Below, in pieces: positions 11,753-45,340 of a stretch of DNA of 64,000 nt. The translations under genes and the position numbers were made by a program. Origin of the DNA: Iphione sp. A-MEVVRFRX5 (Eukaryota); contig OZ320313.1 in NCBI GenBank assembly GCA_976226885.1, positions 61,256,001-61,320,000 on the forward strand, written 5' to 3'. The first letter of the stretch is position 1. Every line of letters begins with the position of its first letter. Under the pieces are notes generated by a model. That model searched no databases and had not been told where the DNA came from. It saw only the letters and a program-made list of their open reading frames with translations.

Positions 11753-12930
11753 TCAAAGAATCCTTAGATCGTTCGATGCATGACATTGTATCGAATATCT
11801 GGATTTTTGAAAGCAACGAATGCTACCTACAAAATATACGATGGCTGGTATGACAAAAGATTTTGATATATGAATGACAGTTTGTACGTCAGTCATAGTA
11901 CGAACATGTCGTAGGAGGTTGAGTAGTATATGCGATTTACTAACTTTTGAGCTTTGTTCTGTAGTGAAAGTTAGATATCGGTTTAGATGGAAGCCCATGT
12001 ATTTGCAACGATCTACTTGCTTTATCTCAAGGCCTTCTGAGGTTATACTTAGTTTCCTGGTTATATATATATACTCCGTTAGTACAGAATAACATATCTT
12101 CTGTTCTAGTTTTGTTATTTATAATACCATTTATAAGCTAAACGCCAAACATATAGGACCTTTATATCCTCAAGCAAGGCTGTTTCTATTGCTTTGACAT
12201 TTGCCAAACCATACAGTAATACTGTATCATCCGCATAGAAAATGCAGTGAATATTTGACACACAATTTAAACTGTCGTTTATGAATAAACTAAGCAAGGT
12301 AGGCCAAAGGATGTTTCCTACATATATACCGAACACTCCATGACAGAACGACTGTGTATATACATAGATGTCAGTACTCATAAATAATAGTTATTAGGTT
12401 ATAGGTCATGTATCGAGGCATTGCCCTCCGTGTCTAACACAATTCAACCCTATAAAGTCATGCATCGAAAATGCGAAACAACAAAATGTAAATTCACAGT
12501 CGTATTGCCACAAAGCCGTGACCTTTGATGAATAGCTACAAATCGCGGTTCCTCAAGGAGAAAAACATGACATGGTCCATTATAGATTTTATATGACTCA
12601 TGCATAAGTATACTATTTGGACATTCTAGAGTCAAGATGCCTATTTTGTTGTTCGGGTATTGATAATACTATCGAATTCAAATTAGTAAATCCGAGTTTT
12701 CATTCGCCTTTGACTCGATACAATTACTACTACGTGAATCCAAACCAAATTCCTTTGAGGACAGTGATTGATATTGCTATTGCATAAGTTGGCATCAGGT
12801 ACTCACTTTACCTCTGAACTATTGTCTTGGCTTCTAAAAAGATAGTGATGTGAAAAGACTGCAATTCATGTCGATCAAAGCAGATTAAATCGAAAATAGT
12901 TCACATTTGTTGAATTCAGTCCAGTCTCTC
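11753..12930 (-). mobile_element. Degenerate, internally deleted LINE ORF2 remnant related to the main element
   Basis: GNILWPTLLSLFINDS...IFYADDTVLL (12381-12115) and KYMGFHLNRYLTF...ISKSFVIPAIVYF (11998-11753), parallel to main ORF2 GSILGPLLFLIYINDS/YADDT/KYLG/ILKAFIIPHIEY; weaker linker trace RDWTEF near 12926. Confidence 0.82.
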
Positions 12931-24919: not shown

Positions 24920-27900
24920 TCGTACATTATCTAATACTTATATCATGTGTTTCACCTGGACCAATCAGATTACAGCATTTTGTAAACATCTGGTTGTTTA
25001 TTGTTTACTTCTGGTTTGCCTACGACTGCACTTTAGCATTACAAACTTGATTGAAATTGACAAATTTGTTTATTTATTTAGCTACAGAAATACTTGAAGT
25101 GGTGATATCGATAGCATTTCAATTTGATTATTTTAGAATGTTTATATGACTTCAAAATTATCCAATCTGCTGTCCTGAAAGAAAATATTCAGCATGCATG
25201 GTCGCATCAGACCAATGCATACATACGACAATGCTGTGGAATAGGGAAAGCACCCCGAGCCATGTTAGAACATGATTCACCATGTCTCAGATTGTGCTTG
25301 AAAACTATATTTTTCTACCATTAATACTACCTTGACGTGTTGCATGCATCACGTGTCAGCCTCAGGGTCACACTAACACAATAAACAGGTTAGTGTTTTT
25401 TTTTTACAGATTAATAAGTCTAGACTTGTTCCCAAGCTAGTTTGCTTACTCTATGCCCAGCGTTGGTAGATGTTTTTCGCGCTGGTCGAAGTATTGTATC
25501 GCCAAATAGTTAATAATAGGAAAGGCGTAATAATGTTTGTAGAAAAAACCCCACAAAGAATCCCATATTGAATAATGTAAAGAAACAATTCAGAATCTCT
25601 GATAGATCTACAAGGGAACAAATTGGCATAAGCTTACACTGACGGAAGTTCTATGCAACCGTCTTATCGCGCTCATGAACAATTCTATCTGAGTGTAATT
25701 TCACTTGCCACACCCATTGTTTCATTTTCCCCGGGACTCGCTGTGGTTCAGTGATGCTTCATTGATCTCATAGAAAATGGCCAAGAGGTATGATAAATTA
25801 CGGCTGCAATTTTATGCCGTTATTCCTCTTCGATTTGGTGCTCATAAATTTGACCAACCGTTTAAAAAATAGACTATGATGAGCAAATCGAAACTCTTTC
25901 TTTACGTTCCTATGCCACTTATCTTATTTTACTTTTTCATTATTCTACTTTTTATTTCATAGTATGAGAAACCCTCGCTCGAATGTAGCTCTCTTCGAGT
26001 AGAATCACCCCGCACAATTTACAAGTCCATGGGCGCGTTTTCGGTTCCTATCTTGTATCCCTGGCACTTTATTTCCTTGATGCCCATATTCGTCTTATTA
26101 TTAGCTTTCGACCACCCGAACTGCTCACCTTATTAACATTCATGACGTGTTACTTTAGGTACGCCATGTGTCCACCAGATGGCAGTATCTACCAGGTAAC
26201 GAGCTGCTCTAACGACTTGGCTATCTGGAGGACAGGGGAATGGCATTGTTGATGATCTATACTTGATGACGCCAACGCAGAACTCATATAGCCTATAAAG
26301 ATCTAGCAACATGCCAGTAAAGATAATATTGATATACGTATCTGATGAATGTAAAAGCATATACAATATTTACATCATAATCAGTAAGTAATTGGACACC
26401 CGAAATGGATGTCACCCTGTTGGTATCAACATATGAATGGTTTAAGTTGCTCCGCCTCCCTGATCCGAAAGCATATGTTTCCCTAGTTTTCGACGTTGCT
26501 TTACACGCCAACATGTATTGGTGATTGAAGCTGTTCGTTACGAGTCTTACTGCGGAAAACTAACTGATCGTGGACTCCATACATGTATACATGTATAAAG
26601 ATGTACTTGAGCATGGTCTTTCTGATGTCGGACGATGGCATGCGAGACACTTAAGCCGCTGTGCTACTGCGGTTGGTGTGTGCAGCCAGCATCCTTTATT
26701 CCTCGTACCTCGATCCTCCACAGGCCCACCCTCCTGGCTATTCGGTGGCATCAAGCCAAGAGTAGATCCCCCTCCCCCCGGCCACCCCCGACCCCTGACT
26801 CCCACCCGACCAGCCACCTATAGTTGGCATAGATCACGCCGCTCTACGGATCTCTCATCACCGACTTACTGTATAGCAGCGCGGCAAAGTCGGCCAATAC
26901 GATGGGCTGTACAGGCCTTCTACTGCCACCCCCATCACCCCCAATTTAACAACAGACACCCGCGACCACCGCCACCGCCAGCGTCGCAGACGTCACGTGG
27001 TACCGGCGGTGCCCTCTGGCGGCCGATAAGACCGATGGGCGCACTGATGTCGGCGATGGGCATGCGCGTGAAGGCGCTTCCGGTGAGTCTGAGTAGCGCC
27101 TCGGTCGACAATAGCGCCATGATGAATGTCACTGTGACGCTTGGCGTTTTGGTACGGACACGGCGGGCGGGGAGGAAGAGAGGACGGCTGGGGCTGTCTT
27201 GGATAGGAGGACATTATCTGTGGCTCTTGCTTCCCGATCTTGCCACCAGGAGGCTGTTAGGACGGAAGTCGTGCTTTCCATCAGAGCCCGGTGTGTCCAT
27301 CCAGTGTGTTCCTTCTGTCAGGTGGTCCTTATGAACAAGTGCTAAATACGCAACACTTTACTGCACCAATGATGACGCCTCGCCTGTATATAATCTATCA
27401 GGTCCCGCACGATAACCTGTATTCAAAACACCAGGTTTTAGAATATATATAGATATAGATGTAGTTATACAACATCTGTTTATTTATTTACCAAATAGAA
27501 GCAGAGAATATTGATCAACAAAAGAACAAGAAGACGCCAAGAACATTGAGGTTTTAATACCCTCGCCTTTACCAAGCCTCTGATAAGAAATCGCTCCATT
27601 ATTGCAGGTGGTGTTTTGTTTTGTATTGTTTTTATTCCCCGGTCGGTATTTCGTATTCGTTTCCCCTATATTAACAACGCAACTTGAGACTTTGGAGGCT
27701 TGACAATAACAAAAACCTAAACATACATGTTCTTTCTCATGCTGCTTTTAAGATGTTCGTAGTGTGCAGCTTCAGAGGCAGGTTCTTGTCCTGGTGGCTT
27801 TGGCGGCCTGAGGGACGTTTTAACTAAGGTTTACTAACTTGTACATTGTTGCGTTCCCTAGAATTACGAAACTGTACAAATCTCTCTCTGATGATCGGCA

Positions 27901-32579: not shown

Positions 32580-32609
32580 TTTTTTTTTTTTTTTTTTTAA
32601 ACGTTTATT
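32580..32609 (-). terminator. Polyadenylation signal and poly(A) tail of the LINE
   Basis: Plus strand T19 (32580-32598) then aaacg-tttatt; minus strand reads AATAAACGTTT-A19. Confidence 0.85.
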
Positions 32610-32973
32610 TTCTCTGGAATTTTTTTGGAGGCTCGAGGCCATTACATTTTCAGATATTGTTGATTCGTACATATAAAGTTCTTCAAAACATTCAACGTTC
32701 TTCCTAAGTCTGTGAGAAAATTTGCCTTAATAGTATAGTCGGGTAAGTAGGAGTTGATGTTATGGGATGAGGTTAAAGGTGGTAAAGTTAGCTCTGATGA
32801 GTGGGAAAAATGATATGATATGATAAGGGGTGGGGAAAGGTATGCATGTGTTTTTGGATTAATATTGCACAGTTCCCGATAATCCGTTACTCTTTGGAGA
32901 TATGAAAGTTCATTTGTCAGGGGTCAGGAAGCAGGTCGTCAGGGTTTAAAGCAATCATATTTACTACAAGACT

Positions 32974-35835
32974 TCAGGGCACCCTCCAGTTTTCTTTTCG
33001 CAGCTTTGAGAGAAAGTAGCTTTTCAAATGTTTCTTCAGTATTTTATCCTTGGGTAAGGGACGTAATTTTAAAGACAAGGGTAAGTCATTCCATACTCGA
33101 ATCAGATTGTATCTACATGACTGCTTGTATATTTCTCTCTTTGGTTTTGCACATCTTTTACTTAGCCTAAAATCATTTCTGGTTTTACCTAAGGTAGTTG
33201 ATACGGTCTCACAGGTTAGATCACTCTTTACTGCTAGTATGGCCAGGTGGTAGTCACAACGAAGATCCAAAATTGGTAGATTCAATTTCAAATAGAGATC
33301 GACAATGCTACTAGTCCAGTCTTTATAACAAACCTTCACCACTCTGTCAAGCATCCTCCTAAGATTTAAAAACTGGGTACTGTCTCTCTTGTTTAAGAGT
33401 ACTGCTCCATATTCAATGTGAGGGATTATGAAGGCTTTTAGGATTTTACTTGCTGTTGTCGTACTCATATAAGGTCTTGTTTTATTGAACATGAAAATTA
33501 GTGGTTTAATCTTTTTAATTATTCCTTCAACTTGGCTTCTCTGACTCATGTGTTTGTCTAGAGTTAGTCCCAGATATTTTACAGAATCTACATTTTTGAT
33601 TGGTTGGTTATCTAGTTGTAGGTGTAGATGTGATTTCTTATATTTACTATTTCTGTTGCAAAAAGTGATTACTTCCGTTTTAGATGGATTGATTTTTAAA
33701 CGATTTGTTACACACCAGGTTTGCAGGTTTTGCAGATCATACTGTAGAGTTTCGGTTAGGCTAGTTGGATTTTCTCCCGTTGCCATTAATAAAGTATCGT
33801 CTGCGTATAATATACAAGTTGCACGCCGTATTGCATGAAAGGAGTCATTTATATATATGAGGAACAACAGGGGCCCCAGGATACTTCCCTGGGGCACCCC
33901 TGCTGTCACTGTTGCCAGGTCCGAGATAAGGTTATTTGCTTTCGTTTTTTGAGTCCGATTCGTTAAATAACTTTCAAGCCATGTTCTATATGTAGATAAA
34001 CCGTAATTATTTAATTTATTTAGAATAATTTTATGGTCAATACTGTCAAAAGCTTTGGCGTAATCTACTAGGGCCATACCTGTAAGCAATCCGTTATTCA
34101 GATTCTCATAGATGATGTCTGTTACTGCTACTCCTGCTTTTATTGTTGACTTGTCTTTTCTAAACCCAAATTGTTGTGGATGTAACAAATTGTTTTCCTC
34201 AAGATATTCATATATTCTTGTATGGACTATCCTTTCTATAATCTTGGAAAAAGTCGATAGTATTGTAATCGGTCTATAATTGCCTGCCTGTTTTCGGTCT
34301 CCTTTTTTAAAAATTGGAGTTATAATACCAGTTTTCCAATCTCTGGGTACAATACCTTTTTGCAGTGAACAATTTACCAAGTGCGTTATCTGCTCCGGTA
34401 TGGTTTGCAGTAAATCTTTTAATATTTTGTTAGTGCACCAGTCAATTCCAGATGGTTTATTTATATTGATATTGCCTATAATTTCTTTTATTTCCTTTTG
34501 CGTTGCTAGTTTCATAGGAAGTTCAGTTAATCTTGTCTCCACCGGGCAATGATTGATGGTGTGACTATCATCCAAGGCACCAAGTTGTTTACTCCCTATA
34601 CTTGCGAAAAATGTGTTTATGTAGTTGCAGGATTCGAACTCAGATAATTCTGCACCTGTTGCATCCATAACAATGATTTTATTTTCCTTCTTGTTCTTTG
34701 TTTTAAATAATCGATTGAGGTTCTTCCAGTATTCTTTAGGGCTTGGGTTATTATCTATCATTTTTTCAAAATATTTGGACTTGTTTCTTCTTATAAGAGA
34801 CTTAATAATGTTATTCATTTTATTTGCTAGTAGTAAGTACTTCATTTCCTTCGAACATCGAAATTGTCTCAGGTAGCGGTGTTTCCTATTTATGACTGTC
34901 ACTATTTCACTTGTTAGCCATGGTGTTAAGTATGTCTTGATGTTCTTTTTCCGTTTAGGACAGACAGCATCTAGTATGTCTATTAAGGTTATGCGGAGAA
35001 AATGCCATAAAAATTCTACATCATCACTCTAAAAAAATGGCCTCCAGCACACAGTGTTTAGATGTTGAATACTTTTGTTTAGGGTTTTCTCATTCCAACT
35101 TCTACATACTTTATTTCTTGTTTCGTATTTTTTTAAATGAGGTATAGTTGCTGTTAAGACTATTCCATGGTGATCACTGATGTTCGTCTTATCTATATCG
35201 ACTGATAGTTTCAATTTTGTTCTGGTGTATACATGGTCAATGATAGTGCTGGCTTGTTTTACTTCACGTGTGGGGGTATTAACCATTTGGGATAGTTTGA
35301 ATTTTGCCTCGAAATCTAAAAAATCCTGCTTGTGCCTGTTATTTTTTGTATAATCAATATTAAAATCTCCAATGAGAATAACTGGGGAATTTATGCTGGA
35401 CATGCAGTTTGATAGGTAGTCGAGCAAATTTTCAACCTTTCCTTGGGGTGGACGATATAGTAGGCCTATACTATGGTTTAACTCACCATCTATTTTTATC
35501 CACAAACATTCATACTCTTTGGTTGAATCAGATAAATTGCTGTATATTGACGTGTTAATTATTAAATTTGTTTTAGAATAAATACATAAACCCCCTCCTT
35601 TTTTGGTTTTCAAAGACTGGGTTTTTGTTGCCCTGTCACACCTTGTGAGGTTATATCCGTCGATGTCTAATAGGCCGTCTAGTACGTCGCTATGCAACCA
35701 AGTCTCTGTTAAAAGTACTAAGTCATATTTGTGATTTAAGATTTTAATTTTGAGAATATCAAATTTGTTAAGAACGCTTCGTATATTAATATAGAATATT
35801 TTTAGGGTGCCCCACTGTTGTTTTTTACTACTCAT
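32974..35835 (-). pseudogene. LINE ORF2 (APE endonuclease + reverse transcriptase), 954 codons with one in-frame TAG at 35031-35029
   Basis: Track ORFs 35029-35835 and 32974-34902 are in the same frame with 42 open codons between them (PFF*SDDVEFLWHFLRITLIDILDAVCPKRKKNIKTYLTPWLTSEI). EN motifs YINIRS, LTETWL, YRPP, GDFNID, IDHVY, SDH; RT motifs KPSGID, NYRPITIL, QFGFR, DYAKAFD, GVPQGSILGPLLFLIYIND, YADD, KYLG all intact. Confidence 0.95.
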
Positions 35836-36046
35836 TTACAATAATTCGGGATATGGTCATAGATTCACCCCATTCTAGTTCAGACATACCGATGAATGTA
35901 GAAGTTCGTAGTCGAGTTGATAATAGTGACATAGACAAGAACAGAGTCATTATTGAAAAAGTCCTTAATATCGCGAGAAAAGATAAAGAGATAATATAGG
36001 GGTAGTAGGCCGTAGTGCACATGATTTGCTGATAATGTATGCACAT
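35828..36046 (-). CDS. Candidate 72-aa hydrophobic upstream ORF overlapping the ORF2 start by 8 nt
   Basis: ATG-initiated; hydrophobic stretch PYIISLSFLAILRTFSIMTLFLSMSLLS; stop TAG lies within ATGAGTAG that begins ORF2. No recognised domain; could be chance. Confidence 0.25.
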   Translation of the reverse strand: MCIHYQQIMCTTAYYPYIISLSFLAILRTFSIMTLFLSMSLLSTRLRTSTFIGMSELEWGESMTISRIIVNE

Positions 36047-36788
36047 AGTACAATAGAATCAGCAAGTTGGGATCAGGGGGTGACCACTGGTTTCGAATTA
36101 CAGTTTCATTAATAGGAGTGTACTACCTATTTTAAATAATTCTTCAAGTAAAGGATTATCGGAACTCTGTCTTTATTAGTATTAATAGTTTGAAACGTTT
36201 CAACAAATCTCAAACGAGAGTTTCAATGCCTATGTTACAATCATAATGGATTACATTTATATGAGCCTGGGTATCAATAATCTCAAATGAGAAAGGTCAA
36301 TATATCATAAAACGCATACCATGTTTTTTTTAATGCGATAAATGTATATAGCTGAAGTCCAATGTACAGTAACGATTTCATATGTTAGTTTTGGTTAGTC
36401 ATGACATCAATCCAACACACAGTGCTCTCAACTGAACTTTGTACTGAGTGGCATACTTAAACAATTGCTAAAGTCTACCATTATGGCGTTTGTACTCAGG
36501 AATCTATCCTGTGTAAAATAGTAGCATTCTCGATTCTCCAATGAGAGCATACTTAGACATCATTAGATCTTGTATAACAATACAAGCATTAAACAAGTTA
36601 GATTTTGTATCTATCTACGACAATCTATAACTATCTGTCTGTCCTCTCCAATGAGAGCAGACAAAACGATCGAGCAGATGTGACTCATAAAATGAATACA
36701 TGGGTGTATCCTTCTTATTTACGTAACTCCAACGAGTTGATGCATATTTGTTTACTCAAACGAGTTTTTTAATGTTTATCGAGGCACA

Positions 36789-37457
36789 TTACATAGTGCA
36801 TTTGGTCACAAATTTAATCACTTCCTTTGCTGCTTGATATCTAGCCATATCATCAAAATGGCATCCGTCCACCAACTTAAAATACTTGTGATTGTTGACA
36901 CGATTGTTCCTCGAGTGAATAATTCCTCCTAACCACGGGGTAGGCATGTCCCTGCGTGCATTTGTAGCGGTTATTTCATTGTTGACTTTAAAAATTGCCT
37001 CGTCTATCACAAATTGGTAATAGTCTTTGGTATTTGGGTTAATCAGATAATTTCCCTGGTTGTAGTTATAAGCAGCGATGTCCGTTCCTGTGATGGTTGC
37101 AAATGAGAACGCACACGGCTTCAGGTGTTGCAGCAGCATATTTTCTGCATCGTACAGTTCAATTTGAAAACGAGTGAACATATCATAGACTGAGTCAGTA
37201 GCTGCACTGACCTGACGGATAATTTCGTTGTTTGGGAGTCGAAAATGCCTATCTAGCGTAGTAAGATTGTTGCTACCAGCCCATATTATGGTGAGCTTCG
37301 GTTTGACTTCAAAGGAGAACTGAGTAACTTTACTTGAAACCTGGTATAACCGGCGTCCAGGGAAGCTATGCACTTCAACTTAGTGACCTTGTTTCCATAT
37401 GTCATATTCCAAGTCTCGACCATGCGAGTCTGAGAAACAATGGATTTCTGTTTTCAT
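36789..37457 (-). pseudogene. SGNH/GDSL esterase ORF (222 codons) interrupted by one in-frame TAA at 37382-37380
   Basis: Reading upstream of the track ORF (37373) in frame gives ATG at 37457: MKTEIHCFSDSHGRDLEYDIWKQGH*VEVHSFPGRRL. All four SGNH blocks are then present: block I SDSHGR (Ser), block II SFPG, block III WAGSNN, block V VDGCH (Asp/His). Confidence 0.75.
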
Positions 37458-37508
37458 CAATACCGGTTTACAATACGCCATCATCTGCTACGTTCACTAC
37501 CAGGCTTA

Positions 37509-38492
37509 TTAGAGGCGGACTGACTGGCGTTGGGCGTGATCGCGAAGTTCAGTCAGTAACCTTCCCAGATGATTTTCTCCTTGAAAGTTACCATTCAGCA
37601 GTTGACCTGATCGAAGAGTGTCACCTGCACCCCAAAACGAATCCAGGCTCGCCTCAATCAACTTTAGATTGTTCGTCTCGAGTAGTTTCTTTCCTAGTCG
37701 GGTATTTTGATTGAACTTCGCTTGTAGTAGTTCTCGCATGACATCACACCGTTTGACATTCCAGCTATCATCAAGAAGCAGTCCTCTGCTCTTTGTTTTG
37801 ATATGGGCAGGATCATTCATTTGTAAGAATTCTTTCTGCTTCACACGATCACCCAGGTGCTCGCATTTTGCAATTGCGTAACCCTGTTCCACTGAGTGCA
37901 TGGTCATACCATGCCATGTGAAAGTGCAATTGTAAAAGTTCGACAAGGGATGGTGTTTACCAGCAAATGCCAGGTAGTCCCTATTACTGACCTCAGAGGC
38001 ATTCTCCAATGAGAACTCAGCCGGTAGGTTGTGCAGATTAGAGTGAGTGTACATATGTCCATTTATATACAAACGATCACCCTCGAGTTTTGTGTTTGCG
38101 CCTAGGTTTTTCGCATGGAAAAATACTTTCCTGAGCTCTGCTCTCGAGGACCTCTGTGTAGGAGTTAAATCGTCATTAATCCACACACCTCGAAGATGTT
38201 TAATGTTTGATTTATGGTTGATCACTTCAGTTTTCCACGAATATTTAACAAAACTGACCAGTACATCACGGTGTTTGTTGGGAACTCGAGTACCAAGTCT
38301 AAAACACTGATCAATTTCATAAGGGTGAATTGTTGGTGAGCATGTCTGGAGAATAGACATGACTTTCTCCATCAGTTGCCTGGTCATTTCTGATTCCTCT
38401 TCCATTAGTCCAGAAATTACGATATTGTTTTTCCTTAGGACTTTGTCTGTTTTGGAATCACTAGTTTGTCGAATATATCCCAGTGAATACAC
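37509..38492 (-). CDS. LINE ORF1 protein: L1-type RRM + C-terminal domain (aa ~20-150) fused to a NADAR/YbiA-like domain (aa ~173-320)
   Basis: ORF1 motifs RKNNIVISGL.E, IDQCFRLG, RDVLVSF, VWINDDLTP..R..R..L, GDRLYING. NADAR motifs LSNFY, SVEQGY..AK, DP...K, W...R.DVM..LL.AKF.QN..L...LL.T....L.EAS.DSFWG.G, G.N.LG.LL.ELR match the YbiA/NADAR pattern. Start codon (GTG at 38492) is nominal; true N-terminus probably lost. Confidence 0.9.
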   Translation of the reverse strand: MYSLGYIRQTSDSKTDKVLRKNNIVISGLMEEESEMTRQLMEKVMSILQTCSPTIHPYEIDQCFRLGTRVPNKHRDVLVSFVKYSWKTEVINHKSNIKHLRGVWINDDLTPTQRSSRAELRKVFFHAKNLGANTKLEGDRLYINGHMYTHSNLHNLPAEFSLENASEVSNRDYLAFAGKHHPLSNFYNCTFTWHGMTMHSVEQGYAIAKCEHLGDRVKQKEFLQMNDPAHIKTKSRGLLLDDSWNVKRCDVMRELLQAKFNQNTRLGKKLLETNNLKLIEASLDSFWGAGDTLRSGQLLNGNFQGENHLGRLLTELRDHAQRQSVRL

Positions 38493-41020
38493 TAGAACAT
38501 TTAATTTCCCACATAATACATGTAGTTGAAATATGATTTAACACCTATATTAGTTGATGGTTTAGTTTGTTTTTCTTCCAACCTGCTGGAAGCCCATGGA
38601 TCGTTTGATTCATGACGGATAGAAAACAAGGTTCGTTTTTCTAGTGTAATGAAACAGACTCTAGTTTGTGTTTTGTCACCAGAAGATAACCACCTGAGGA
38701 TCTGATACCTCAATAGATATTGGTTGAAGTATCCAATTTAAAAATTGATAAATTCAAGGTAGATGTACGATAATTAACGTGTATATACTTATAACAAGCA
38801 TGCCTATTTTCAAATCACAATGCTTTCAGGGGTCATTTTATAGGCACATTTGCATGAAGGGAGGCGAATGTAACGCAAAGTTATATGTATGTGAATCTAT
38901 CAATGATTGAGGTAGTCGCGGTTCACAGAAATGCTGAGTCATGCTTTTGGTTTTGCCCGACTGCGAGCTATTGTTACGACCAGGATTCGCACAGAGCTGC
39001 ATACAGGTAGAAACTAACTCATTGCGAAACACATTTCAGGATGGATTGCTGTAGTGGTGAGGTTGCATCGTTAATCAACAAAACGTTCTCATTTTTTTTC
39101 TATCTCTCTCACTGTATTGGAATACTTATGTTACGATATTTCAGTATAAAAATTTTTATTTCGCTTGCAATATTTGATTACATCCACAGCTATGAATTAA
39201 AACTTGATCAGGTGCGAAGGAATAAATAATTGACATTCTGATATGTTTTCCATTTTATTAATATACTATTATCTAGCAACCTCTTCTGCGCATCGCTACA
39301 ATTATTAAATATCTTCATGTATATGACAAGGGTACCGCGAAAATATAATCAACGGCCTTTTCAGGGGTCATAGGGGCGGATGATATTATATCACAATATA
39401 TATGGTACCGGTATAGTTTTTAAAGCACTCGTTCAAAGTATTTGATATTGTATACAAACGAAACTATAATCACGAAGTCCAACATTTGGATGTCGGTCCT
39501 TACAGGAATTTGCATTCCCTGAAGCCATTCTTACCCCTAAAGACCGTCCACTTGCCATTCATATGTCTCCCTACTTTTAATAGTTTTATTCTGGAAAGGT
39601 TGAAATATTGTCACGATTTCCAGCGCAGAGATTGTAAAATTGTCAATTGCTATTCTCATCACTTAATGAAGATGGAAAAGCAGGTTACATACTTTTTGGC
39701 CTGAAGCTGAATAAGAATGCCTCCGAATAGCGTGTACAACAACGAAGCAGCTGCCGGCATGGACCAACCGAAAGGATACTAGGCGTAGCTAATTGAAGTT
39801 CATTTAAATTCTGAGAAATTGCTACGCGTTGGACGACAACGCATTTGCTTTTCGCATGCGAAATTACCATCAGCCGTCAATGAGACGTCAAAGTGATGCG
39901 TTTGGTAGATCGACGATCGCGTTGCAATGACAAAGGGAAGCTCAAAACGCGTTTTAGCTTTCTTTATTGGCTCATTAGGGCGCAGTACTTGGGACGATCA
40001 AACCTGTTTGATTTTGAAGGAAGCAGCCATTCGTATCGCCAAATGTGGATTTACAATTTCGGAAGCGATTGCTGGTTATTTCTAAAATATAACATTATTC
40101 TCAACAGGATAAAATGCTAGTTTTTATCAAAGTATGAATCGCGATTACCCATTTAAGTCATATTTTTAAGAAAGGTGTCACCGGGCCCCTGATCATGATA
40201 TTTGTTATATAAACTTTATTGTGAAAAGCTGAAATTTGCATCGACATATATATATATATATATTTATATATGATGTGATTACAGACTTAATCTTGAATGT
40301 AAACAGCTGTGAGATTGGTTTATTCCATTTAAGTGTTTCCAAATCCAGGAACTTTATCTTAATTGGCGGTGAAATCCACGTGTGAGATTGAATTAATTTA
40401 CCAATAATTAAAGAAAGAGGGGAACACGCCTACATTTAATGTGTTCGCCACAGACGGATTGATACATCGCTACGGTCACAAAAACTAAGCCTGACGTTGA
40501 AATTTTACATCCTTTTGAAATGGAGCCTCATTAACTGGTACTCCAGTAAGATTTCTTCTGAAGTTTTGGTGATATATATGTCGGGGAGATGCAACATCAG
40601 ATGAAAATTTGATTCCGAAGGATGGAAATTTGTCTTTTTCATTTTCCTTCTTTCAGACCAATATTCTGATCATATATTTTCGACGTCCCACAGATTCTCC
40701 GAGTCTAATATGTATGTAAATTGAGAGGTGAATGACTGTGATAGTGACAAGTTGGACAGTTTTGCTCCAAAGTAATTAGAGAACTGAGAATTTGTTTTGG
40801 TGACAGTGATTTGCATAGTAGTGAGTGGCATAACTTTAAAAATGCTGCCCTACATGTGCCAAATACTCAAGGTCCACCGAGGCAATCAATGCATCCTGTC
40901 CCTTTTAGAACTCGTTTTAAACAATCAATTACCGCTCTTGACTACTTTCTCGCTACTCATGTACCTCTCTGATCTTGTTTAGCGCCTCCCTCTTCCGCCC
41001 ACTTGCCACTTCTGGCAACT

Positions 41021-43775: not shown

Positions 43776-45340
43776 TTTAGTTTCAACTTATCAACTATAC
43801 TACTGACCTGGGTCATGACCCCTGCGAATTTTCTGCTAACGAATTCACTTGGATACACATCCCTCATAATCCATTTCATCTCACCCCTGGTGCAATGGTC
43901 AGTATGTCTGAGATGTCATGCTCTTGCTTGATTACCAATTGAAAGCGAACTGAGAAGTTAAGCCCACGTTAACGGTGGCTGCTCCGCTGATAAATATTAT
44001 CAAGGCGGACAGTGCGCTATCATTCTCAATGGCAGCTCCCATACTATTGGTTGTTCCTATGGTTACTAATTCAAAACCATCCACCATAACGGTAACTAAA
44101 TCCTGTCCTGTTGTGGAAGCAGGAGACGCGCACTGGGCTTCTCATAATAAGGGAAGGTTGAGTATTCATTTCAACATTAACAGTCGACACTCATACCCAT
44201 ATCACAAGACTTGGCAAGCTTTGCTGATCTCTCGAAAAAGCCTCTTCGCGAGAAGCAGATGTGTCTGTCGTGTGCTGTATGTCTTAGGAGATGGGCTCTC
44301 TCAATGGAATTAATAAACGTACATAAACACACCGGCTCTGAAAATCAAGATTAAGTGATGATGGACAATGTCCAAGACTCTCAGCGATGAGTCAATTAAA
44401 GCACGACCACAGCGTCGGTGGCTGTCCTGACGGAGTACATTATATACATATAGTGTCTGATGAAAGTAAATATATTATGATGATTTAATAATGCCATATT
44501 CTCCTGGCAAAATATGTACTCAGGAAGGTGTGAAGTAATTACCGAAAGGCGGCCAGAAAGCGCCAAGGCCAACAGTCCTGCAGCGTGCAGCGTCAGAAAT
44601 ACTTTATCAGTCGCAGTAGATGCTCGGGCACTAGTAGAATTGTATCGTGTTTTTGCCGTTTGTCCTAGGTCCCACAAGGACGTATGCCTGTATTCTGACA
44701 CACGCACCACACCAACTGCAACACGCGCCACCCGTACGCAATGTGCCGCATTGCCCAGAACAGCTACGTGGCATGCATATAACATGAGGATGGCTAGCAG
44801 TGTGAAAATGAGAGTTAAAGGGGGTAGGGTTGAGGAAGGATGCAGATACTGGAATGTTGTTATCCTGAGCATCATCAGACACAGCGCCCTAGTGTCCAAG
44901 GCTTGTCACTAGGGTGCACCATTTACTATAAAAAGCCAACACTTGTGACAGAATTACAACCGTCCGAGTCGTTAGTCTATCCTGCAGGGACTAAGACGGG
45001 TTCATTCACCTCACTTTTTACTCGAACGGTTTAACTTATTACCCACACAAAGAAAGGTCCAGTATTTAGGAGCAGAACAAAAGCCGAAGGTCACATCGTC
45101 ATATATAGCATAATGAGAATGTTCTGGCAGTCTGTCTTGGACAGCACATGTGTAAGAATAATGATTTTTCATGACCTTTTATCAATCATTCTTCAATGTC
45201 CCTGCAATTTACCAAAAGTTAACTTCACTATCAATGTAGATTTTACATCTTGAGGAGGAAGTGGCTCCAAGATTTCCATACTTCCATCTCTAATGATTTT
45301 CTCCCCAGAATATGCCTTTGGCCACATTGCATCTGTAACA

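What the first reader, a model, noticed from the sequence alone, without database searches (positions are those of the whole stretch)
37509..38492. LINE ORF1 fused to a complete NADAR (ADP-ribosyl hydrolase / N-glycosidase) domain
Seen: an uninterrupted frame joins an L1-type RRM/CTD ORF1 (aa ~20-150) through a ~20-aa linker to a full NADAR domain (aa ~173-320, nt ~37976-37533) retaining SNF, the Glu of SVEQGY (E202) and the Asp of DSFWG (D284). Known: NADAR proteins include E. coli YbiA (N-glycosidase on riboflavin intermediates) and the antitoxins that remove ADP-ribose from guanine placed by DarT1; acidic residues in these two motifs are implicated in catalysis; animal guanine-specific DNA ADP-ribosyltransferases exist (pierisin, clam CARP-1). 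Known ORF1 accessory domains are PHD, zinc knuckles and esterase; I am not aware of a described ORF1-NADAR fusion, though it may exist unremarked in repeat libraries. Inference: the element may carry its own nucleic-acid de-ADP-ribosylase in the RNP as counter-defence against host ADP-ribosylation of its RNA, cDNA or target site.
Basis: partly seen in the sequence, partly recalled or inferred. Interest (0 to 1): 0.93.

Follow-up and report, generated by a model that had tools for sequence, protein, structure and literature searches.

The report
LINE ORF1 protein carrying NADAR hydrolase
A broken copy of a jumping gene (LINE retrotransposon) encodes an RNA-binding coat protein fused to a well-preserved NADAR enzyme domain. 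The fusion is shared by many LINE families, so these elements may carry their own eraser of ADP-ribose marks on DNA or RNA, though this has not been tested.

Summary
ORF 37509-38492 (-) joins an L1-type RRM+CTD ORF1 module to a complete NADAR domain: Pfam PF08719 E 6e-25; AlphaFold pLDDT 95; Foldseek hits to P. nicotianae NADAR, E. coli YbiA and the human L1 ORF1p trimer.

It is not a chance juxtaposition. More than 100 protein clusters (50% identity) align across both domains. Relatives sit directly upstream of EN-RT ORFs, and one identical ORF1 occurs on five contigs. The NADAR active-site residues are near-invariant. Among five subfamilies the NADAR part is the most constrained region of ORF1 (pN 0.125, with synonymous sites saturated).

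- The second catalytic acid is E280, not D284.
- The GTG start is not real. This copy is 5'-truncated, lacks the coiled coil, and has one stop each in the SGNH-esterase ORF and in ORF2, so it is dead.
- The fusion was already noted in passing for oyster Tx1 LINEs (PMC12477816).

The scan's own unchecked notes report 229 NADAR findings in this genome. Function is inferred only: probably a base-ADP-ribose glycohydrolase carried on the LINE RNP, possibly as counter-defence. This is a new member of a barely described kind. Interest is moderate to high.

The parts
32580..38537 (-). Whole LINE copy, about 5.96 kb: 5'-truncated inside ORF1, 3' end at the poly(A)
   Evidence: tblastn of 160 family ORF1 proteins reaches no further than 38537. 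The A-run and AATAAA were read. No target-site duplication was found.
37509..38492 (-). ORF1 remnant of 327 codons plus TAA: RRM-CTD-NADAR without the N-terminal coiled coil. The first ATG is codon 30 (38403-38405).
37983..38447 (-). L1-type (type II) ORF1p RRM + CTD module, aa 16-170
   Evidence: Foldseek hits to human L1 ORF1p 2ykp/2yko/2ykq at E 2e-6, and to 2ldy and 2w7a. Family motifs G28, E31, R65 and R75 are conserved. There is no Pfam PF02994 hit.
37527..37976 (-). NADAR domain, aa 173-322
   Evidence: PF08719 at E 6.4e-25. TIGR02464 at 88.8 bits. Foldseek hits to 8bau at 3.9e-10 and 2b3w at 3.3e-8.
37887..37889 (-). Codon E202, equivalent to PnNADAR E43 and E. coli C7 NADAR E88; invariant in 48 of 48 relatives
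37866..37868 (-). Codon K209, equivalent to PnNADAR K50 / C7 K95 (phosphate and adenine contact); K or R in 44 of 48 relatives
37653..37655 (-). Codon E280, equivalent to PnNADAR E125 (the Glu that defines the YbiA subfamily); invariant in 48 of 48 relatives
37641..37643 (-). Codon D284, equivalent to PnNADAR D130 (water-mediated pyrophosphate contact); D in 38 of 48 relatives
36789..37484 (-). Separate SGNH/GDSL-type esterase ORF of 231 codons from ATG 37482-37484. It lies in the same frame as ORF1 but is separated from it by five in-frame stops (including ORF1's own TAA). It is broken by one in-frame TAA at codon 35 (37380-37382).
   Evidence: tblastn to the middle ORFs of L002/L003 (3e-13) and L004 (6e-12). 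The L004 ORF passes Pfam Lipase_GDSL_2 at 7.5e-8. The SDS, GSNN and DGCH motifs are visible. The window ORF itself has no Pfam hit.
32974..35835 (-). ORF2 of 953 codons: APE endonuclease plus reverse transcriptase, broken by one in-frame TAG at codon 269 (35029-35031)
   Evidence: Exo_endo_phos at 2.9e-12 and RVT_1 at 1.4e-41. The RT is 35% identical to the RT of the L001 ORF2 (5e-85).
32580..32609 (-). AATAAA signal (32604-32609) and a 19-nt poly(A) tail (32580-32598)

Best explanation
The locus is a dead, 5'-truncated copy of a three-ORF, APE-type LINE: ORF1, an SGNH esterase ORF, and EN-RT.

In intact relatives, ORF1p has the L1-type architecture: a disordered N-terminus, one long helix likely to form a coiled coil, an RRM and a CTD. 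A catalytically equipped NADAR domain of the Glu-Lys-Glu type (as in PnNADAR and YbiA) is fused to the C-terminus. Every ORF1p that coats the element's RNA therefore brings a NADAR active site into the RNP.

Shown here:
- the architecture;
- its recurrence next to EN-RT;
- conservation of the active site;
- strong purifying selection on the NADAR part.

Inferred from published NADAR biochemistry: the domain most likely works as an N-glycosidic ADP-ribosyl-base hydrolase. It would remove ADP-ribose from guanine-N2, and possibly cytosine, on the element's RNA, its nascent cDNA or the nicked target DNA.

Further inferred: this protects retrotransposition from base ADP-ribosylation. The modifying enzymes could be host ARTs such as the CARP-1 family, or ARTs made by microbes.
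For: Domain identity.

Family-wide fusion: 108 representatives at E<1e-30 nearly all align over aa 15-320.

LINE context:
- P0003 is identical on 5 contigs, each followed at the same spacing by a 964-aa EN-RT ORF.
- P0002 shows the same arrangement.
- Logan loci L001-L009 carry ORF1-NADAR, with or without an SGNH ORF, followed by EN-RT.

The full-length relative P0003 is modelled with a 93-residue helix, then RRM, CTD and NADAR.

Active site in 48 relatives: E202, E280 and W244 are in 48/48; K209 is K or R in 44/48; W287 is in 44/48. These were mapped onto the PnNADAR-ADPr contacts in PMC11543638.

Selection across five subfamilies: synonymous sites are saturated (pS 0.73-0.96), while pN is 0.125 for NADAR, 0.168 for RRM-CTD and 0.238 for the N-terminus.

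Biochemical precedent:
- All four NADAR families remove G-ADPr from DNA and RNA, and the NADAR and YbiA types also remove C-ADPr (PMC12945103).
- Phage orphan NADARs (AdfN) are proven counter-defence against DarT1 (PMC11825919).
- CARP-1 homologues are mainly in Bivalvia.
Against: - No assay, substrate or host ADP-ribosylating restriction factor is known for any LINE.
- The window shows no ART gene, and the host taxon was not identified.
- The domain passes the TIGR02464 'riboflavin-intermediate N-glycosidase' cutoff, so a small-molecule activity cannot be excluded from sequence.
- D284 and K209 vary in some relatives.
- This copy is broken, so it says nothing about activity at this locus.
- Expression could not be examined.
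Confidence: 0.55

Rival explanations
1. The NADAR domain acts in RNA-end or NAD-linked RNA metabolism of the LINE transcript rather than in reversing a defence mark. Examples would be removal of an ADP-ribose-type adduct or an unusual cap-like group, or handling of ADP-ribose derivatives.
For: PMC12477816 proposes RNA-intermediate processing for the NADAR domains in oyster LINEs and Ectocarpus Gypsy elements. The ESM Atlas lists a 126-member cluster of giant-virus proteins that fuse mRNA guanine-N7 methyltransferase (a capping enzyme) to NADAR. ORF1p is an RNA-binding protein.
Against: No NADAR has a demonstrated RNA-end or cap activity. All tested activities are N-glycosidic: base-ADPr on nucleic acids or riboflavin intermediates.
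Confidence: 0.2
2. The domain is a housekeeping-type YbiA N-glycosidase acting on small molecules such as reactive riboflavin-pathway intermediates or free ADP-ribosylated nucleotides. The LINE would carry it for a metabolic or detoxifying benefit unrelated to its own nucleic acids.
For: TIGR02464 (riboflavin biosynthesis intermediates N-glycosidase) scores 88.8 bits against a cutoff of 73.7. The Glu-type active site is the YbiA-subfamily arrangement.
Against: Animals do not synthesise riboflavin (established knowledge). The domain is covalently tied to an RNA-packaging protein in more than 100 diverged families. The best structural and sequence match is PnNADAR (8bau), which hydrolyses guanine-ADPr, rather than YbiA. 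YbiA-type enzymes also remove G/C-ADPr.
Confidence: 0.07
3. The NADAR fold is retained as a non-catalytic binding or scaffolding module, for example binding ADP-ribose, NAD or nucleic acid, or helping RNP assembly.
For: K209 and D284 are substituted in a minority of relatives. The pTM of 0.87 for the two-domain model suggests fixed packing of NADAR against the CTD.
Against: Both catalytic Glu residues and W244 are invariant in 48 sequences that are only about 30% identical overall. That pattern is typical of maintained catalysis.
Confidence: 0.1
4. The fusion is an accidental juxtaposition or a gene-model artefact confined to this locus.
For: This copy has no proper start codon and sits in a decayed element.
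Against: The same contiguous two-domain frame occurs in more than 100 clusters at 50% identity. It occurs on five separate contigs with identical ORF1 and ORF2 spacing and in nine fetched loci.
Confidence: 0.01

Closest known systems
NADAR-bearing ORF1 proteins of Crassostrea gigas Tx1 LINEs (Repbase), noted in PMC12477816
   Same: A YbiA-family NADAR domain inside the ORF1 protein of an animal LINE. This is the only published mention found.
   Different: That report is one sentence with no analysis of architecture, active site, selection or distribution. Those families are labelled Tx1. The clade of the window element is unresolved, and it has a separate SGNH esterase ORF and a short (953-codon) ORF2. 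Direct comparison was not possible because no Repbase sequences were available.
Human LINE-1 ORF1p (PDB 2ykp/2yko/2ykq, 2ldy, 2w7a); type II ORF1
   Same: RRM + CTD fold (Foldseek E 2e-6, about 150 columns). Full-length relatives have a disordered N-terminus and a long helix before the RRM.
   Different: Only 16-18% identity and no Pfam PF02994 hit. The LINE protein here carries an extra C-terminal enzyme domain that human ORF1p lacks. The window copy has lost the coiled coil.
Phytophthora nicotianae NADAR (8bau) and E. coli YbiA (2b3w)
   Same: Same fold (TM by target 0.73 and 0.77). The residues equivalent to E43, K50, W89, E125, D130 and W133 are present.
   Different: Those are stand-alone single-domain proteins of cells. 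Here the domain is the C-terminal module of a retrotransposon RNP protein. Identity is 26-30%.
Phage orphan NADARs (AdfN of T4-like phages and others), PMC11825919
   Same: A mobile genetic element carrying its own NADAR. In phages this is shown to strip ADP-ribose from the element's DNA and defeat a host ART defence. It is the closest functional analogy.
   Different: The host is bacterial and the toxin (DarT1) is known. T4-type AdfN replaces the conserved Glu with His, whereas the LINE domain keeps Glu (E280). No cognate host ART is known for LINEs.
NADAR domain at the N-terminus of Pol in one Ectocarpus Gypsy LTR-retrotransposon lineage (PMC12477816)
   Same: Independent capture of a YbiA-family NADAR domain by a retrotransposon.
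   Different: A different element class (LTR), a different fusion partner (Pol rather than ORF1) and a different kingdom. The nearest relatives of that domain are bacterial.
Esterase-type (type IV) ORF1 of CR1/L2 LINEs (PMC4120745)
   Same: An SGNH/GDSL hydrolase encoded upstream of EN-RT in a LINE.
   Different: Here the esterase is a separate second ORF that follows a type II ORF1-NADAR, not the ORF1 itself. Some relatives (the P0002 and P0003 elements) lack it.

Membership tests
NADAR superfamily (Pfam PF08719 / DUF1768) | Profile HMM match above the curated gathering score | tested here: met
   88.7 bits against a cutoff of 35.1, E 6.4e-25, covering profile positions 9-161 of 163
NADAR superfamily (Pfam PF08719 / DUF1768) | NADAR fold | tested here: met
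   AF2 model with pLDDT 95. Foldseek hits to 8bau at E 3.9e-10 (TMt 0.73) and to 2b3w at E 3.3e-8 (TMt 0.77).
NADAR superfamily (Pfam PF08719 / DUF1768) | Conserved Glu and Lys of the ADP-ribose site (PnNADAR E43/K50; E. coli C7 E88/K95) | tested here: met
   E202 and K209 are present. In 48 relatives, E is in 48/48 and K or R in 44/48.
NADAR superfamily (Pfam PF08719 / DUF1768) | ADP-ribosyl N-glycosidic hydrolase activity | not testable with these tools
   Needs an enzyme assay
YbiA-type / Glu-type NADAR (de Souza-Aravind YbiA subfamily as used in PMC11543638) | Glutamate at the PnNADAR E125 position | tested here: met
   E280 aligns to E125 and is invariant in 48/48 relatives. TIGR02464 scores 88.8 against a cutoff of 73.7.
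DarT1-associated NADAR antitoxin (DarG1) | Catalytic Asp two residues before the conserved Glu position (E. coli C7 D171), and a neighbouring DarT1 gene | tested here: not met
   The residue two before E280 is L278. The element encodes only ORF1, the SGNH ORF and EN-RT, with no ART.
Phage AdfN(T4)-type NADAR | His replacing the conserved Glu | tested here: not met
   Glu is retained at position 280
Type II (L1-type) LINE ORF1p | RRM followed by CTD | tested here: met
   Foldseek hits to 2ykp/2yko/2ykq (about 150 columns, E 2e-6), 2ldy and 2w7a
Type II (L1-type) LINE ORF1p | N-terminal coiled coil | tested here: not met
   It is absent from the window copy, which is truncated near 38537. It is present in the family: P0003 has a helix at residues 39-131. 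Trimer formation was not tested.
Type II (L1-type) LINE ORF1p | Pfam Transposase_22 (PF02994) match | tested here: not met
   No hit at E<=10 for aa 1-172. The relationship rests on structure only.
APE-type non-LTR retrotransposon (LINE) | Apurinic-type endonuclease plus reverse transcriptase downstream on the same strand, and a 3' poly(A) | tested here: met
   Exo_endo_phos at 2.9e-12 and RVT_1 at 1.4e-41. AATAAA plus A19. A profile of the ORF2 family hits human L1 ORF2p at 7e-48.
APE-type non-LTR retrotransposon (LINE) | Target-site duplication | tested here: inconclusive
   No shared k-mer of 9 nt or more was found between the flanks. The exact 5' junction is uncertain.
Tx1 clade (the clade named in the only published mention) | RT phylogenetic placement with Tx1/L1 | tested here: inconclusive
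   A single-sequence search hits R2 (1e-15) but not L1 ORF2p. A family profile hits L1 ORF2p best. No reference RT set was available for a tree.
SGNH/GDSL hydrolase (second ORF) | Pfam Lipase_GDSL_2 match and the Ser / Gly-Asn / Asp-x-x-His blocks | tested here: inconclusive
   The window ORF has no Pfam hit. It is homologous to the L004 ORF (6e-12), which just passes PF13472 (33.5 against 32.9). The SDS, GSNN and DGCH motifs are visible.

The most novel reading that the evidence does not exclude
Animal LINEs carry NADAR because their hosts, or microbes living with their hosts, ADP-ribosylate guanine or cytosine bases on retrotransposon RNA, cDNA or nicked target DNA as a restriction mechanism. 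CARP-1-family ARTs, concentrated in bivalves, are the obvious candidates. The ORF1p-NADAR fusion would then be the eukaryotic counterpart of phage AdfN against DarT1. It would point to an undescribed nucleic-acid-ADP-ribosylation arm of genome defence in invertebrates.
Probability: 0.2. Interest if true: 0.9.

Novelty: new member of a known kind. Interest (0 to 1): 0.62.

Why it matters
Accessory enzymatic domains on LINE ORF1 proteins are rare; esterase is the only well-known one. Their functions are unknown.

The NADAR here is near-universally conserved, selected and apparently catalytic, and it sits on an RNA-packaging protein. NADARs have only recently been shown to erase base-linked ADP-ribose from DNA and RNA, and phages use them as counter-defence. 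This makes a concrete hypothesis testable: that base ADP-ribosylation of nucleic acids occurs endogenously in animals and matters for transposon control. The NADAR literature itself leaves open whether such modification exists in eukaryotes (PMC12945103).

The family is large: more than 100 clusters at 50% identity, with intact identical copies. That provides many natural proteins for assays.

Tried and rejected
1. The search for homologous proteins with the 327-aa ORF found nothing. The exhaustive HMMER search was needed.
2. Pfam gave no Transposase_22 hit on the N-terminal half. The L1-type assignment rests on structure.
3. I tested whether the C-terminal extensions of longer relatives (P0005, P0008, P0011) are the esterase fused in frame. 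They are not.
4. Taxonomy of relatives could not be established. Nearly all are unnamed ENA or Logan proteins, and AFDB organisms were withheld. The only usable pointers are Haliotis rufescens, Annelida in the ESM Atlas and C. gigas in the literature.
5. RT clade. I first read (R2 hit, no L1 hit) as 'not L1/Tx1'. I withdrew this after the profile search hit L1 ORF2p best. The clade is left open. The C-terminal WNxLP-like motif and the esterase suggest the CR1/L2/Jockey group, but only from memory.
6. dN/dS proper could not be computed because synonymous sites are saturated (NG86 undefined). I reported pN and pS instead.
7. The target-site duplication search found nothing.
8. Sequencing runs and expression could not be examined. 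None was listed for 36700-38600, and three later attempts on another stretch did not complete.
9. No second copy of the element lies in the window. There is only a 62-aa RT fragment at 12145-12330.
Full report
OBSERVATION

The minus-strand frame 37509-38492 is open for 327 codons.

Its C-terminal half (aa 179-319) matches:
- Pfam NADAR PF08719 at E 6.4e-25, 88.7 bits against a gathering score of 35.1;
- TIGR02464 at 88.8 bits against a cutoff of 73.7;
- by sequence, the solved NADAR of Phytophthora nicotianae (8bau, 3.5e-9) and E. coli YbiA (2b3w, 2.7e-6).

The N-terminal half has no Pfam hit, not even Transposase_22 at E<=10. An AlphaFold2 model built on 48 aligned relatives is very confident (mean pLDDT 95.2, pTM 0.87). 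In the PDB, Foldseek returns:
- the two NADAR structures first (E 3.9e-10 and 3.3e-8);
- then nine chains of the human LINE-1 ORF1p trimer (2ykp, 2yko, 2ykq; E 2e-6 to 6e-5, about 150 aligned columns);
- the RRM-CTD NMR structure 2ldy and the RRM structure 2w7a.

THE ELEMENT AROUND IT

All parts lie on the minus strand.
- After ORF1's TAA (37509-37511) there are four more in-frame stops.
- A second ORF then starts at ATG 37482-37484. It has 231 codons and is broken by one TAA at codon 35.
- This second ORF has no Pfam hit of its own. It is homologous to the middle ORFs of related elements (tblastn 3e-13 and 6e-12). One of those passes Pfam Lipase_GDSL_2. The Ser, Gly-Asn and Asp-x-x-His blocks of SGNH hydrolases are visible.
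- ORF2 follows at 35835-32974. It has 953 codons with an APE endonuclease (2.9e-12) and a reverse transcriptase (1.4e-41), and is broken by one TAG at codon 269.
- The 3' end carries AATAAA and a 19-nt A-tail at 32580-32609.

At the 5' end the listed GTG is only the mechanical ORF start. Stops lie immediately upstream, the first ATG is codon 30, and homology to 160 family proteins ends by 38537. Relatives have 100-250 more residues at the N-terminus. This is a 5'-truncated copy of about 5.96 kb with two further premature stops. It is dead. I found no target-site duplication.

IS THE FUSION MORE THAN CHANCE?

Yes. An exhaustive HMMER search of 1.84 billion representatives found 10,923 proteins at E<=1e-3 and 108 at E<=1e-30. 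Nearly all of the best 150 align in one stretch over aa ~15-320, that is, across both domains.

LINE context is clear in the relatives:
- P0003 (438 aa, 35% identical) is encoded identically on five different contigs of one ENA assembly. Each time a 964-aa EN-RT ORF follows 367 nt downstream, amid unrelated flanking genes.
- P0002 has the same layout with a 1042-aa ORF2.
- Nine Logan loci show ORF1-NADAR followed either directly by EN-RT or by an SGNH ORF and then EN-RT.
- The window's RT is 35% identical to the RT of the L001 ORF2 (5e-85).

A model of full-length P0003 (pLDDT 90) has a disordered N-terminus and one 93-residue helix (39-131), followed by RRM, CTD and NADAR. This is the type II (L1-type) ORF1p plan with an added enzyme. 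According to PMC4120745, type II ORF1 is known in the L1, CR1, L2 and R1 clades, and esterase ORF1 in CR1 and L2. None of the ORF1 types listed there includes NADAR.

IS THE ENZYME LIKELY ACTIVE?

PMC11543638 describes the PnNADAR-ADP-ribose complex. E43 and E125 hold the distal ribose. K50 contacts adenine and phosphate. W89, R93, W133 and, via water, D130 contact the pyrophosphate. E125 defines the YbiA subfamily, and DarT1-associated NADARs use an Asp instead.

Through the 8bau alignment these map to E202, E280, K209, W244, R248, W287 and D284. Conservation in 48 relatives that are only about 30% identical:

| Window residue | PnNADAR equivalent | Conservation |
|---|---|---|
| E202 | E43 | 48/48 |
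| E280 | E125 | 48/48 |
| W244 | W89 | 48/48 |
| K209 | K50 | K or R in 44/48 |
| W287 | W133 | 44/48 |
| D284 | D130 | 38/48 |

Its partner is E280, not D284.

Among five subfamilies with retrievable DNA, synonymous sites are saturated (pS 0.73-0.96, so NG86 dS is undefined). Mean pN is 0.125 in NADAR, 0.168 in RRM-CTD and 0.238 in the N-terminal region. The NADAR part is the most constrained part of ORF1.

WHAT IT PROBABLY DOES

This section is inference. Published assays show that:
- members of all four NADAR families remove guanine-linked ADP-ribose from DNA and RNA;
- NADAR- and YbiA-type members, including an animal (sponge) enzyme, also remove cytidine-linked ADP-ribose (PMC12945103);
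- phages carry orphan NADARs (AdfN) that strip ADP-ribose from phage DNA and defeat the DarT1 defence (PMC11825919);
- CARP-1-type guanine ADP-ribosyltransferases are exclusively eukaryotic and mainly found in Bivalvia.

A NADAR tethered to the protein that coats LINE RNA is therefore best read as a base-ADP-ribose glycohydrolase acting on the element's RNA, cDNA or target DNA. A counter-defence role is plausible but unproven.

The rivals are an RNA-end or NAD-linked RNA-processing role, a small-molecule YbiA-like glycosidase, and a non-catalytic module. The first was suggested in PMC12477816 and is echoed by giant-virus capping-enzyme-NADAR fusions. Chance juxtaposition is excluded.

NOVELTY

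The fusion is not unreported. PMC12477816 (Genome Biol 2025) states that ORF1 proteins of several Tx1 LINE families of Crassostrea gigas in Repbase appear to contain YbiA-family NADAR domains. It also reports NADAR in the Pol of one Ectocarpus Gypsy lineage. Further literature searches found no other mention.

- the breadth of the family;
- the full type II + NADAR architecture;
- the separate SGNH ORF in one lineage;
- active-site mapping;
- evidence of selection.

The RT clade of the window element is unresolved, so I cannot say whether it is the same lineage as the oyster Tx1 families.

The scan's own unchecked notes list 229 NADAR findings in this genome. One describes an intact 7.95-kb three-ORF copy and another a PolB-NADAR fusion. 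I did not verify those. They are leads, not evidence.

VERDICT

This is a new, but dead, member of a barely described kind. Interest is 0.62. The hypothesis it makes testable, endogenous base ADP-ribosylation as a transposon-host conflict in invertebrates, would be important if true. I put its probability at about 0.2.

Noticed in passing
P0001 (NCBI XP_048255699.1, Haliotis rufescens; not in the window): A 4240-aa 'uncharacterized protein' of red abalone contains seven NADAR domains (Pfam 842 bits in total). It was the top hit to the window's NADAR part. It may be a giant multi-NADAR host protein or a chained gene model.
   Followed up: partly
window 36789-37484 (-): A separate SGNH/GDSL-type esterase ORF lies between ORF1-NADAR and EN-RT. 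It is in the same reading frame as ORF1. It is present in some related elements (L002-L004) and absent in others (the P0002 and P0003 elements), so it is an optional third module.
   Followed up: yes
window 12145-12330 (-): A short reverse-transcriptase fragment (62 aa, 37% identical to the element's RT). It is a remnant of another LINE.
   Followed up: no
ESM Atlas cluster, not in the window: A 126-member cluster of Nucleocytoviricota proteins fuses mRNA guanine-N7 methyltransferase (a capping enzyme) to NADAR. This is another case of a NADAR tied to RNA handling in a mobile or viral genome.
   Followed up: no
Logan contigs L001-L009 (samples ERR14368245/48/49): One set of samples holds at least seven diverged ORF1-NADAR LINE subfamilies (59-85% pairwise protein identity) with intact ORF1s. 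This indicates a diversified and probably recently active family in that unnamed organism.
   Followed up: partly
window 26570-27334 (+) and 44396-44899 (-): These are the only other ORFs of 160 aa or more in the window. Neither has a Pfam match.
   Followed up: partly
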